63,806 nucleotides of DNA, from assembly GCF_000002075.1 (NCBI RefSeq), contig NW_004797271.1:2575341-2639146 (forward strand). Direction: 5' to 3'. Numbering within the stretch: position 1 is the stretch's first letter; every line of letters begins with the position of its first letter. The translations under genes were made by a program, and so were the position numbers. Below, piece by piece: positions 44,622-45,815 of the stretch. The notes beneath the pieces were generated by a model. It had not been told where the DNA came from. It did no database searches and was given only the letters and a program-made list of their open reading frames with translations. This DNA is from Aplysia californica. Taxonomy: Eukaryota.

Positions 44622-45160
44622 ACACTGTGCAACAAAATTTACCTTTTTTTCTGCTGCATTGAGTACATGTAGTATGAAAGATATTCATTTGTCATCCTCT
44701 TTACTTTTGAGTAAAAGAAGACAAGAATTGAAACTATATGGCAGACTCTTTTATATGGGACAATTCATGCTGTTGGAAAAGCAACAGACTTGACAAGGTA
44801 AAAAAGTAGTGAGTGCAACTATTGGGAGTGTATCTATTGTTCTTACAGAATAAATGGGAATGGAAACTGTTATTTCAACATTTTTCTCCTGTCTTGGATT
44901 AAAAAATTCACGTAAAAAAACTGTTGAAAGATATTTAAAAAGTTACAGAACTAATAATTCACAAAAGCTCTGATCTTGGAAAAGATTGTCCTGATAAGTC
45001 CGTAGCTCAGGCCGAAGGGCTAGAACTCAAATGGCTGCCCGATCAGAAAAGATAAGTCCATGGTTTTCCTGTCCGCATTGCCACACAAACACTTCATGCC
45101 ATGGGGGAGGGGAGGTGTTTGAACACTGGTGGGGCTTGCTCTGTTTGCAAATTCAGTTGT

Positions 45161-45587
45161 CATAATCATCAATGCCTTTTAACCCTGGCAATCCATAGGA
45201 CACATACAAGCTCTTTTCATTGATCTCTGTCCTGGACCATCCTTCCTAGCTCGTTCCAAGTGAGCTTCATCTCTCTCATGTCCCTTTCCACACATCTCCT
45301 CCATGTTTCCCATGGCCTCCTTTCGGCTTTCACTGCCTCGCATCATAAACTCTCCCTTCGGAGAAGTTCCACGACCAGCCAAGCAGAGATTCTGGTTTTT
45401 GCTTGTATGTGTTTCTGTATCAGGTTCTTTTTACAAGAGAGGTTGTTAGCCTCGTGACTCAAACCCCAACCTGGAGGCAGGATGACTCTGTTTCAGGAGT
45501 CACTACCTGGTTCGCCCTTTAGTTGCCTCGTACGACACGCTAGCACCACGTCAGATCTATTCTTCTCAATGCTGGGACTGCATGGCA
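45161..45587 (-). mobile_element. Non-autonomous bipartite RTE derivative (5' UTR fused to 3' end)
   Basis: 5' structured motif, then an RTE-type UTR motif (CTCCAGGTTGGGG...GGCTAACAACC...TGTAAAAA), then an ORF2 C-terminal remnant ([23 protein letters not shown]) and a TGATGA tail. Flanked by imperfect ATTCAGT direct repeats. Confidence 0.75.
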
Positions 45588-45815
45588 GATTCAGTGTTCA
45601 GTCAGAGAGAAATAACATTGTGCTGTTAAGCATGATGCACAAGAAAAGATCCATTGCCCAAATAGACAAAATCAGTTCCAAGGGAGAGTACTTGGTCTGC
45701 TGACAACACACAGCTGATATGAAATATTCCAGATGCGGAGAAAGATTATGACTCCATTTAACTTTTTTTTTTTTACAGTGCAAGTATTTAATGCCCCGAC
45801 AAGACATATTAGATA

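What the first reader, a model, noticed from the sequence alone, without database searches (positions are those of the whole stretch)
45505..45587. Structured 5' RNA motif at the head of a non-autonomous RTE element: candidate self-cleaving ribozyme of unassigned class
Seen: on the minus strand the element begins GCCATGCAGTC-CCAGCATTGAGAAGAATA-GATCTGACGTGGT-GCTAGCGT-GTCGTACGAGGCAAC-TAAAGGGCG. It can form an imperfect first stem (GCCATGCAGTC/GATCTGACGTGGT) closing a loop that ends in GAAGAATA. It can also form a second hairpin (GTCGT-ACGAG-GCAAC, one mismatch), with possible loop pairing CCAGCA/TGCTAG. It sits just upstream of the RTE-type UTR motif GGTTGGGG...GGCTAACAACC...GTAAAAA. Known: non-LTR retrotransposons, RTEs included, carry HDV-like or twister ribozymes at this position to cut their 5' end out of read-through transcripts. 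I recall, without being able to verify it here, that a GAATA...TGTCGTAAGAGGCGACTAA motif recurs at the 5' ends of invertebrate non-LTR elements. Inference: this is a decayed copy of a 5'-processing RNA. I could not fit it by eye to hammerhead, twister, pistol or canonical HDV patterns, so it may be an uncharacterised class or variant.
Basis: partly seen in the sequence, partly recalled or inferred. Interest (0 to 1): 0.75.

Follow-up and report, generated by a model that had tools for sequence, protein, structure and literature searches.

The report
Knotted RNA heading RTE jumping genes
The start of this dead jumping-gene copy carries a worn version of a doubly knotted RNA fold that heads RTE-type jumping genes in this animal and appears in DNA from other organisms. 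It may be a new kind of self-cutting RNA, but cutting has not been tested.

Summary
The sequence is as described. On the minus strand, 45586 is the first base of a TSD-flanked, internally deleted RTE-clade LINE copy.

It has 200 exact hits in this genome (control 0), mostly in a second RTE family. It is also in at least 119 metagenome contigs.

- Two tandem H-type pseudoknots, S1/S2 and S5/S3.
- An invariant hairpin, S4, and two single-stranded blocks, GAAUA and UAAA.
- The fold starts 1-2 nt from the element's 5' end.

Covariation supports it:
- On a structure-blind alignment, 88% of cells pair against 77.5% when shuffled (0/500).
- Slid controls give 36-51%.
- RNAalifold finds S2, S5 and S4 on its own.

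No Rfam 15 family matches, and an HDV-like descriptor fits none of 7 heads. The window copy is decayed, with six pairs broken.

Function is inferred only. My best reading is a 5'-end-defining self-cleaving ribozyme of an unassigned class (about 0.4). A non-catalytic RNP, stability or translation element is nearly as likely. The RNA-seq data were too thin to decide.

The parts
45158..45586 (-). Whole element copy. It is an internally deleted ('bipartite') RTE-clade LINE: about 240 nt of 5'UTR, the first ~28 nt of the ORF, then the last ~150 nt and a GAT-type tail.
   Evidence: Longer copies run into an APE endonuclease ORF (L014) and RT pieces (L015).
45587..45595 (-). Upstream copy of the target-site duplication (ACTGAATCT).
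   Evidence: compared with 45149-45157.
45149..45157 (-). Downstream copy of the target-site duplication (ACTGAATTT, one mismatch).
45583..45586 (-). S1 5' strand (nt 1-4). The window reads GCCA and the family majority reads GCCG.
   Evidence: S1 forms 4/4 pairs only at offsets 0 or 1 after S2a (33 and 39 of 133 heads, against 7 or fewer at other offsets).
45575..45580 (-). S2 5' strand (nt 7-12). It lies in the loop of S1.
   Evidence: Six to seven of its 7 pairs show changes on both sides.
45571..45574 (-). S1 3' strand (nt 13-16). The window reads CAGC and the majority reads CGGC.
45558..45562 (-). Single-stranded GAAUA block (nt 25-29), at the end of the linker that crosses S1.
   Evidence: Invariant in A1. 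However, the search patterns required it.
45552..45557 (-). S2 3' strand (nt 30-35). The window has 2 substitutions here.
45548..45551 (-). S5 5' strand (nt 36-39).
   Evidence: Pair types UA/CG and CG/GC alternate between families.
45541..45545 (-). S3 5' strand (nt 42-46). It lies in the loop of S5.
45537..45540 (-). S5 3' strand (nt 47-50).
45522..45536 (-). S4 hairpin (nt 51-65). The window has G63>A, which breaks one pair.
   Evidence: It is 99-100% paired and never varies, but the search patterns required it.
45513..45521 (-). UAAA block (nt 66-69) followed by the S3 3' strand (nt 70-74). The window has U70>G, which breaks one pair.
45482..45503 (-). Further hairpin with a CUGAAACA loop. 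Family 2 has a hairpin with a similar GAAAA-type loop and a different stem at the same place.
   Evidence: Seen by eye only; no count was run.
45427..45477 (-). Downstream RTE 5'UTR block (CCTCCAGGTTGGGG...GGCTAACAACC...GTAAAAAG). It probably corresponds to the published conserved RTE 5'UTR domain.
   Evidence: A 23-nt piece quoted in PMC5786205 section 20 resembles its start. I judged the likeness by eye.
45344..45346 (-). ATG of the RTE ORF remnant. The internal deletion junction lies near 45318/45317.

Best explanation
**What it is.** The 83 bases are a decayed copy of an RNA domain of about 75-80 nt. The domain sits at the very 5' end of RTE-clade LINEs and their internally deleted, non-autonomous derivatives.

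**The fold (shown by covariation).** It consists of two tandem H-type pseudoknots:
- S1 (nt 1-4 with 13-16). Its loop (nt 7-12) pairs with nt 30-35 to form S2.
- An A-rich linker that ends in GAAUA.
- S5 (nt 36-39 with 47-50). Its loop (nt 42-46) pairs with nt 70-74 to form S3.
- An invariant hairpin S4 (nt 51-65) and a UAAA block between S5 and the 3' strand of S3.

**Most likely function (inferred, about 0.4).** The fold is a self-cleaving ribozyme of an unassigned class. It would cut read-through or host co-transcripts one or two nucleotides 5' of S1. That would give the element RNA a defined 5' end without a promoter of its own. HDV-like ribozymes do this in R2, L1Tc and some RTEs, and twister variants do it in the RTE-clade element Perere-3.

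**The window copy itself** has six of its pairs broken and would not be active.
For: **A real 5' terminus.**
- 29 of 30 copies start at the same base.
- TSDs abut the start of the head in the window copy, in family 1 copies whose flanks I compared by eye and in the metagenome family M1.

**Recurrence.**
- The pattern has 200 exact hits in this genome against 0 for the reversed control.
- All 150 scored genome candidates match model R1.

**Covariation.**
- On the structure-blind alignment A1 (28 heads), 88.1% of cells pair against 77.5% shuffled (0/500). The covariation score is 0.317 against 0.156 (0/500). Slid controls give 36-51%.
- On A2 (100 heads), 83.9% pair against 72.9% shuffled (0/500). 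S2 and S3 were not in the model that made this alignment, and they show 7/7 and 4/5 pairs with changes on both sides.
- RNAalifold predicts S2, S5 and S4 de novo, with 8 of 14 pairs compensatory.
- S3 takes six different sequence pairs across families.

**Positional analogy.**
- Perere-3 carries an active twister variant at this position (PMC8501958, sections 17-18).
- Kojima notes that bipartite non-autonomous LINEs arise in RTE, Ingi, Vingi and R2, and that RTE, Ingi and R2 carry 5' ribozymes (PMC5786205).
- The ORF's named relatives include many Schistosoma proteins at 50-59% identity and 'craniofacial development protein 2-like' entries.
Against: - There are no cleavage data of any kind.
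- Folding energy is no better than shuffles (z -0.5 for an intact copy). Nested-only folding cannot score pseudoknots, so this is weak evidence.
- Poly(A) RNA-seq gave only 27, 52 and 46 reads of 13-15 million, and no pile-up of read starts at the element's first base.
- In two of the three runs, 3 and 5 reads run across the 5' boundary into one identical flank. Most head reads carry changes in the S4 loop and in UAAA, so I take them to come from one mutated copy and read them as uninformative.
- The base before S1 is a purine in most families: A in 26/40 family 1 copies and 10/12 M1 copies, G in 17/17 M2 copies. A purine start fits ordinary transcription initiation as well as cleavage.
- A group of six contigs has the second pseudoknot but no S1/S2 within 100 nt. 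The second half may therefore work on its own, for example as a protein-binding site.
- The invariance of GAAUA and S4 is partly forced by the search patterns.
Confidence: 0.4

Rival explanations
1. The fold is a non-catalytic RNA element. It could be a binding site for the element's own protein that brings the 5' end into the RNP, as the R2 5' pseudoknot does. It could also be a 5'-end shield against exonucleases, or a translation element. In this reading the 5' end is made by transcription initiation or by another nuclease.
For: - The covariation evidence is the same and fits this reading equally well.
- A group with the second pseudoknot only suggests a separable module.
- All 16 aligned bipartite copies keep the whole head but have 16 different internal junctions. 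That pattern is expected if the 5' and 3' ends lie together in the RNP and the reverse transcriptase switches between them.
- The base at -1 is a purine in most families.
Against: - The structure starts within 1-2 nt of the terminus in every family where S1/S2 is present. Binding alone does not require that.
- A review states that RTEs lack promoters of their own.
- Related LINEs use ribozymes at exactly this position.
Confidence: 0.35
2. It is mainly a DNA-level internal promoter, possibly combined with an RNA role as in the L1Tc Pr77/L1TcRz dual element.
For: - The 5' end is sharp, with a purine at -1 and a pyrimidine at -2 in 34/40 family 1 flanks.
- The GAATA and S4 blocks are invariant.
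- There is a precedent for a dual promoter/ribozyme in L1Tc. I saw only the start of that abstract in a search listing (PMC3383444).
Against: - Compensatory changes in four helices indicate selection at the RNA level.
- Majority-type heads are almost silent in three poly(A) libraries, despite at least 150 head copies in the genome. At position 1558 only 3/10, 2/8 and 0/14 reads lack the single-copy variant.
- The -2 position lies in the flank, so its bias reflects target choice and not a promoter.
Confidence: 0.12
3. It is a diverged member of a known ribozyme class (HDV-like, twister, hatchet or pistol).
For: - S1/S2 have the same strand order as P1/P2 of HDV-like ribozymes.
- Family 2 has an extra hairpin where P4 would lie.
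- The second pseudoknot is a hairpin with an 8-9-nt loop that pairs after a UAAA. That loosely recalls twister P4/L4.
- Two first-reader notes of this scan read it as HDV-like.
Against: - No Rfam 15 match at gathering score in the window.
- No match on the head at E<=10, and none at E<=5 in 10 loci from 7 or more families.
- My HDV-like descriptor gave 0 solutions in 7 heads.
- Only 0-2 nt lie between S2a and S1b, where P3/L3 must sit.
- No conserved C precedes S2b.
- The twister L4 and L1 signature letters are absent.
Confidence: 0.08
4. There is no function. The conservation only reflects recent common descent of the copies.
For: Within one family the copies differ only by neutral decay.
Against: - The motif is shared by families that differ at most other positions.
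- It is also shared by contigs from other sources, and double-sided changes keep the pairs.
- The slid and shuffled controls fail to reach the observed values.
Confidence: 0.03

Closest known systems
HDV-like self-cleaving ribozymes at the 5' ends of R2, L1Tc, Baggins and some RTE elements
   Same: - It sits at the extreme 5' end of a non-LTR retrotransposon.
- It is a pseudoknotted fold of under 100 nt.
- Its first helix starts at or next to the first base.
- S1 and S2 have the P1/P2 strand order.
   Different: - There is no room for P3/L3/P1.1, because only 0-2 nt lie between S2a and S1b.
- No conserved catalytic C precedes the second strand of S2.
- A second, separate pseudoknot follows, in place of a nested one.
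- There is no Rfam hit, and descriptor threading gave 0/7.
Twister variant (T-variant) ribozymes at the 5' end of Perere-3, an RTE-clade LINE of Schistosoma mansoni (PMC8501958)
   Same: - It holds the same position in a related LINE lineage. The ORF's named homologues include many Schistosoma proteins at 50-59% identity.
- TSDs abut it.
- It is a double-pseudoknot RNA.
   Different: - The conserved twister loop letters in Table 1 of that paper are absent.
- The strand order differs.
- No twister model matches.
[quoted passage not shown]
   Same: It is a block conserved in the 5'UTRs of RTEs from many animal phyla and reused in SINEs. The window element also carries what looks like this block, at 45427-45477.
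   Different: - That paper places its domain 'not at the 5' end but in the middle of the 5'UTR'.
- The quoted 23-nt piece matches the downstream block, not the head.
- No RNA structure is proposed there.
- I could not see its figure 2 or its supplementary alignments.
R2 5' RNA pseudoknot / protein-binding motif, and the L1Tc Pr77 dual promoter-ribozyme
   Same: Each is a 5'-terminal structured RNA of a LINE that combines roles such as processing, protein binding and promoter activity.
   Different: The clades and folds are different. For these papers I saw only search listings and the starts of abstracts.

Membership tests
HDV-like ribozyme | The sequence matches a curated covariance model (HDV, CPEB3 or drz families in Rfam 15). 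| tested here: not met
   - 0 matches at gathering score in the window.
- No match on the head at E<=10.
- No match on the head at E<=5 in 10 loci.
HDV-like ribozyme | A nested double pseudoknot: P1 from base +1, then P2, a 3-bp P3 with L3, P1.1, and a C in J4/2. | tested here: not met
   - My permissive descriptor gave 0 solutions in 7 representative heads, while shuffles sometimes gave solutions.
- Only 0-2 nt lie where P3/L3 would sit.
HDV-like ribozyme | Self-cleavage immediately 5' of the first helix. | not testable with these tools
   It needs a cleavage assay. The RNA-seq data were too thin.
Twister, twister-sister, hatchet, pistol and hammerhead ribozymes | The sequence matches the family's Rfam model. 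| tested here: not met
   Searches gave no match on any head.
Twister ribozyme | Conserved L4 and L1 loop letters and the P2/P4/T1/T2 arrangement, as in Table 1 of PMC8501958. | tested here: not met
   I compared with the alignments by eye. Only a UAAA block and a loop of about 9 nt are shared.
RTE-clade LINE (the host element) | A single ORF with an APE endonuclease followed by a reverse transcriptase. | tested here: met
   - L014 ORF: Exo_endo_phos_2, E 2e-5.
- L015 pieces: RVT_1, E 8e-6 and 5e-5. These fragments score slightly below Pfam's cut-offs.
- 891 homologues at E<=1e-10, many with both domains.
RTE-clade LINE (the host element) | Clade assignment by RT phylogeny. | not tested
   I built no tree. 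Indirect support:
- Homologues named 'craniofacial development protein 2-like'. The link of that name to RTE/BovB is from my recall.
- A short-repeat tail and bipartite derivatives.
- The downstream UTR block, which resembles the published RTE 5'UTR domain.
Bipartite non-autonomous LINE | It keeps only the 5' and 3' parts of the parent, and TSDs flank it. | tested here: met
   The window copy joins about 270 nt of the 5' part to about 150 nt of the 3' part.
Published conserved RTE 5'UTR domain (Kojima 2018) | Sequence likeness to the Ceph-domain 3' half. | tested here: inconclusive
   Only one 23-nt piece is printed in the text. It resembles the downstream block at about 45455-45477, not the head. 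The figures and supplements were not available.

The most novel reading that the evidence does not exclude
The double-pseudoknot head is a new class of self-cleaving ribozyme. It would cut one or two nucleotides 5' of its first helix and so define the 5' ends of RTE-clade LINEs and their bipartite and SINE-like derivatives in several animal lineages. That would be a third, independent ribozyme solution at this position, after HDV-like and twister.
Probability: 0.33. Interest if true: 0.85.

Novelty: new variant of a known kind. Interest (0 to 1): 0.72.

Why it matters
RTE elements are among the most widespread LINEs in animals and the source of many SINEs. How their RNAs acquire a defined 5' end is known only for a few lineages.

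This work offers a conserved, covariation-supported fold at that end that matches no curated RNA family. It comes with a concrete helix map, intact natural examples and a covariance model, so the question can be tested directly at the bench.

- If the RNA cleaves, it adds a ribozyme class. It would also help explain why RTEs so readily produce internally deleted, promoter-less derivatives.
- If it does not cleave, it is still a strong candidate for the 5' recognition element of the RTE RNP.

Tried and rejected
**Readings and leads I dropped**
- **Small-RNA-derived SINE head (5S, tRNA, 7SL, snRNA).** No Rfam match, and the head continues into a LINE ORF.
- **A second family seeded from the 81% copy L008.** It is only a decayed member of family 1.
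- **Folding energy as evidence.** It is not significant.
- **HDV-like threading.** 0 of 7 heads. I considered a circularly permuted HDV reading, with S2 as P1. I rejected it because it puts the cut after S1a, yet every copy keeps S1a.
- **Twister.** Rejected after reading Table 1 of PMC8501958.
- **'RNA starts with C, so it cannot be a transcription start'.** I dropped this argument after one search showed a conserved purine one base upstream.
No signal.
- **Proof that the metagenome families are RTEs.** tblastn with the L014 ORF hit 0 of 119 loci. Those copies are non-autonomous and their parent LINE is unseen.
- **Blind scan for S2a anywhere upstream.** It is noisy when G-U pairs are allowed: 7/7 pairs in 41 of 164 heads, against 7 of 164 for a reversed control.

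**Literature**
- The motif string appears in no paper text.
- Four further word searches found no description of this head.
- Ruminski et al. 2011 is not held, and supplements are closed, so a prior description there cannot be excluded.

Full report
**1. Observation**

I searched the window's own 927-Mb genome with 471 nt spanning this site.
- The search gave 2155 first-look candidates, and all 40 scored candidates matched.
- In 29 of the 30 loci fetched, similarity starts at the same base and the upstream sequence is unrelated. L021 differs in its first six bases.
- The window copy is flanked by a 9-nt target-site duplication with one mismatch, at 45595-45587 and 45157-45149.

So this is a true element 5' end.

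**2. What the element is**

- Sixteen copies aligned end to end share the first ~270-400 nt and the last ~150 nt. They end in a GAT-type repeat tail, and each has a different internal junction (16 of 16).
- A longer copy (L014) runs from the same head through about 240 nt of UTR to an ATG. The ORF begins with an APE-type endonuclease (Pfam Exo_endo_phos_2, E 2e-5).
- Another copy (L015) holds reverse-transcriptase pieces.
- The ORF has 891 homologues at E<=1e-10. Named ones come from Schistosoma (50-59% identity), gastropods, fish, turtles and amphioxus. Some are named 'craniofacial development protein 2-like', a name that I recall being given to RTE/BovB-derived genes.

I did not build an RT tree.

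**3. The recalled motif is real**

- Most hits belong to a second RTE family, which I call family 2. It has its own homologous ORF start and differs from the window's family (family 1) at most UTR positions.
- The same pattern, with A or C at one position, is in at least 119 metagenome contigs.
- Together these gave 164 distinct heads in 35 clusters at 88% identity. The five large clusters are M1 (36 heads), family 1 (30), M2 (28), family 2 (20) and M3 (18).
- In M1, TSDs abut the head, and the copies are 480-750-nt bipartite elements.
- The L014 ORF hit none of the 119 metagenome loci. The parent LINEs of those families are unseen, and I cannot show that they are RTEs.

**4. The fold**

Comparing families gives five helices (family 1 numbering, base 1 = 45586):

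| Helix | Pairing | Note |
|---|---|---|
| S1 | nt 1-4 with 13-16 | first helix |
| S2 | nt 7-12, in the S1 loop, with 30-35 | directly after an invariant GAAUA |
| S5 | nt 36-39 with 47-50 | |
| S3 | nt 42-46, in the S5 loop, with 70-74 | directly after UAAA |
| S4 | nt 51-65 | invariant hairpin |

These make two tandem H-type pseudoknots.

*Covariation on the structure-blind MAFFT alignment A1 (28 heads; counts)*

| Measure | Observed | Shuffled | Shuffles reaching observed |
|---|---|---|---|
| Cells paired | 88.1% | 77.5% | 0 of 500 |
| Covariation score | 0.317 | 0.156 | 0 of 500 |

With the partners slid by 1-3 columns, pairing drops to 36-51%.

*Covariation on alignment A2*

I built a covariance model holding only S1, S5 and S4 (R1). 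It found 100 matches in 92 sources. The window's only match is 45505-45586 (minus strand), at 55.5 bits and E 3e-11. On the resulting alignment:
- The whole structure is 83.9% paired against 72.9% shuffled (0/500).
- S2 and S3 were not in the model. They show changes on both sides in 7 of 7 and 4 of 5 pairs.

*Other support*
- RNAalifold on A1 predicts S2, S5 and S4 by itself, with 8 of 14 pairs compensatory.
- S2 examples (5' strand/3' strand): CAGUCU/GGACUG (family 1), GCAGGUG/CACCUGC (family 2), GUGGGUU/GACCCAC (M1), CGGGCU/GGCCCG (M2) and GUGACCU/GGGUCAC (L183).
- S3 examples: UGCUA/UGGCG, UACU/AGUG, CCUGG/CCAGG, CCAGG/CCUGG, UCCAU/AUGGA and CCCAU/AUGGG.
- S1 forms four of four pairs only when its 3' strand starts 0 or 1 nt after S2a. 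That holds for 33 and 39 of 133 heads, against 7 or fewer at other offsets.

It is 57.2% paired against 57.7% shuffled, and 420 of 500 shuffles reach the observed value.

*Caveats*
- In A2, families 1 and 2 are one or two columns out of register for S1 and S3a.
- Some M3 rows were aligned to a false 5' part.
- The invariance of GAAUA and S4 is partly forced by the search patterns.
- Nested-only folding energies are not significant.

**5. State of the window copy**

Against the family 1 majority, the window head has seven substitutions in 83 nt. They break two pairs of S1, two of S2, one of S4 and one of S3. It scores 55.5 bits against 67.3 for intact copies. It is a dead copy.

**6. Known families**

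- Rfam 15 gives nothing at gathering score in the window.
- It gives nothing on the head at E<=10.
- It gives nothing on the head at E<=5 in ten loci from seven or more families. The 23 weak hits all lie elsewhere in those loci.
- A permissive HDV-like descriptor of my own finds no solution in seven heads.
- S1/S2 do have the P1/P2 strand order of HDV-like ribozymes, and family 2 has an extra hairpin where P4 would be. But only 0-2 nt lie where P3/L3/P1.1 must sit.
- The twister core listed for Perere-3 (PMC8501958, section 17) is not present.
- The conserved RTE 5'UTR domain of Kojima 2018 (PMC5786205, sections 19, 20 and 24 read) is said to lie in the middle of the UTR.

**7. Function**

What is shown: a conserved, covarying RNA fold that begins 1-2 nt from the element terminus. 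Everything below is inferred.

*For a 5'-processing ribozyme*
- The position matches that of known 5' ribozymes in related LINEs.
- A review states that RTEs lack promoters and that some carry HDV-like ribozymes (PMC6765202 passages).
- An active twister variant sits at this place in Perere-3.
- Kojima remarks that bipartite LINEs arise in clades that carry 5' ribozymes.

*Against, or neutral*
- Three poly(A) RNA-seq runs gave only 27, 52 and 46 reads, and no pile-up of read starts.
- Most head reads carry one variant set. At position 1558 these are 7/10, 6/8 and 14/14 reads.
- In two of the three runs, 3 and 5 reads cross the 5' boundary into one identical flank. I take these to be one mutated, co-transcribed copy, which says little.
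- The base before S1 is A in 26/40 family 1 copies, A in 10/12 M1 copies and G in 17/17 M2 copies. The RNA therefore probably starts with a purine, which suits initiation as well as cleavage.
- Six contigs with T-rich upstream sequence have the second pseudoknot but no S1/S2 within 100 nt.
- Twelve copies sampled by their 3' end (99% identical) are all 5'-truncated at different points, and none has a head within 800 nt. Ordinary truncated copies therefore coexist with the head-bearing bipartite ones.

My estimates: self-cleaving ribozyme about 0.4; non-catalytic RNP, stability or translation element about 0.35; mainly a promoter about 0.12.

**8. Novelty and limits**

- The motif string is in no searchable paper.
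- Four further word searches found no description.
- Ruminski et al. 2011 is not held, and figures and supplements were not visible. An earlier description cannot be excluded.
- An earlier follow-up in this scan (s1-680739, seen, after my) reached the same general reading. It is not independent evidence.
- Cross-species material here is unnamed metagenome contigs. I did not try to identify their sources.

Noticed in passing
L001-L030 (own genome); window 45158-45586: All 16 family 1 copies aligned end to end keep the complete head and tail, but each has a different internal deletion junction. The M1 family in metagenome contigs shows the same pattern. This looks like repeated template switching between the 3' and 5' regions, not amplification of one master copy.
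   Followed up: partly
L210-L221 (own genome): Twelve copies sampled by their 3' end are 99% identical there, which points to recent activity. All are 5'-truncated at different points (173-485 nt kept), and none has a head within 800 nt.
   Followed up: yes
Base -1 of heads in L001-L209: The base before S1 is non-random: A in 26/40 family 1 copies, A in 10/12 M1 copies, G in 17/17 M2 copies. In family 2, base -2 is C in 9/10. In family 1 flanks, base -2 is a pyrimidine in 34/40, which suggests a target-site preference.
   Followed up: partly
L014:1481-2120: Strand-specific RNA reads switch strand within the element. Head reads lie on '-' and ORF-region reads lie on '+'. The variants and flanking letters in the reads suggest that each set comes from a single copy embedded in a host transcript. 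One loose end at 1801 reads straight into the element's 3' part, so an expressed bipartite copy exists.
   Followed up: no
L061-L090 (family 2): Family 2 carries an extra perfect 8-bp hairpin (CCCCATAG-TTTTAC-TATGGGG) inserted between S1b and GAAUA. M2 and M3 have 18-nt and ~60-nt GTAA-rich linkers at the same place. This linker tolerates large insertions.
   Followed up: partly
L138, L191, L139, L160, L099, L170: These contigs have the GAAUA-S5/S3-S4 half preceded by T-rich sequence, with no S1/S2 within 100 nt. This may be a different element type that reuses only the second pseudoknot.
   Followed up: partly
Window 45427-45477 (-) and L101, L133 downstream of their heads: A second conserved UTR block (CCTCCAGGT.GGGG...GGCTAACAACC...GTAAAAAG) lies ~110 nt into the element. 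It resembles the published RTE 5'UTR / Ceph-domain piece.
   Followed up: partly
Run X12 (organism B), laid on L014: Contigs of a second species label hold the same family with the same 5' boundary and few differences (2-9 in ~110-125 nt). The family is shared by close relatives.
   Followed up: no
L097:2397-2482, L139:10228-10311, L053:249-345, L141:1334-1422, L148:1695-1787, L138:4822-4926, L099:3479-3566: Second, weaker matches to the head model lie inside the same loci. Some have changes in the S4 loop and stem. They are more decayed or more distant copies that the exact-pattern searches could not find.
   Followed up: no
L083 upstream of its head: A run of N lies directly upstream of a family 2 head. 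I left it as is and excluded the row from the counts.
   Followed up: no
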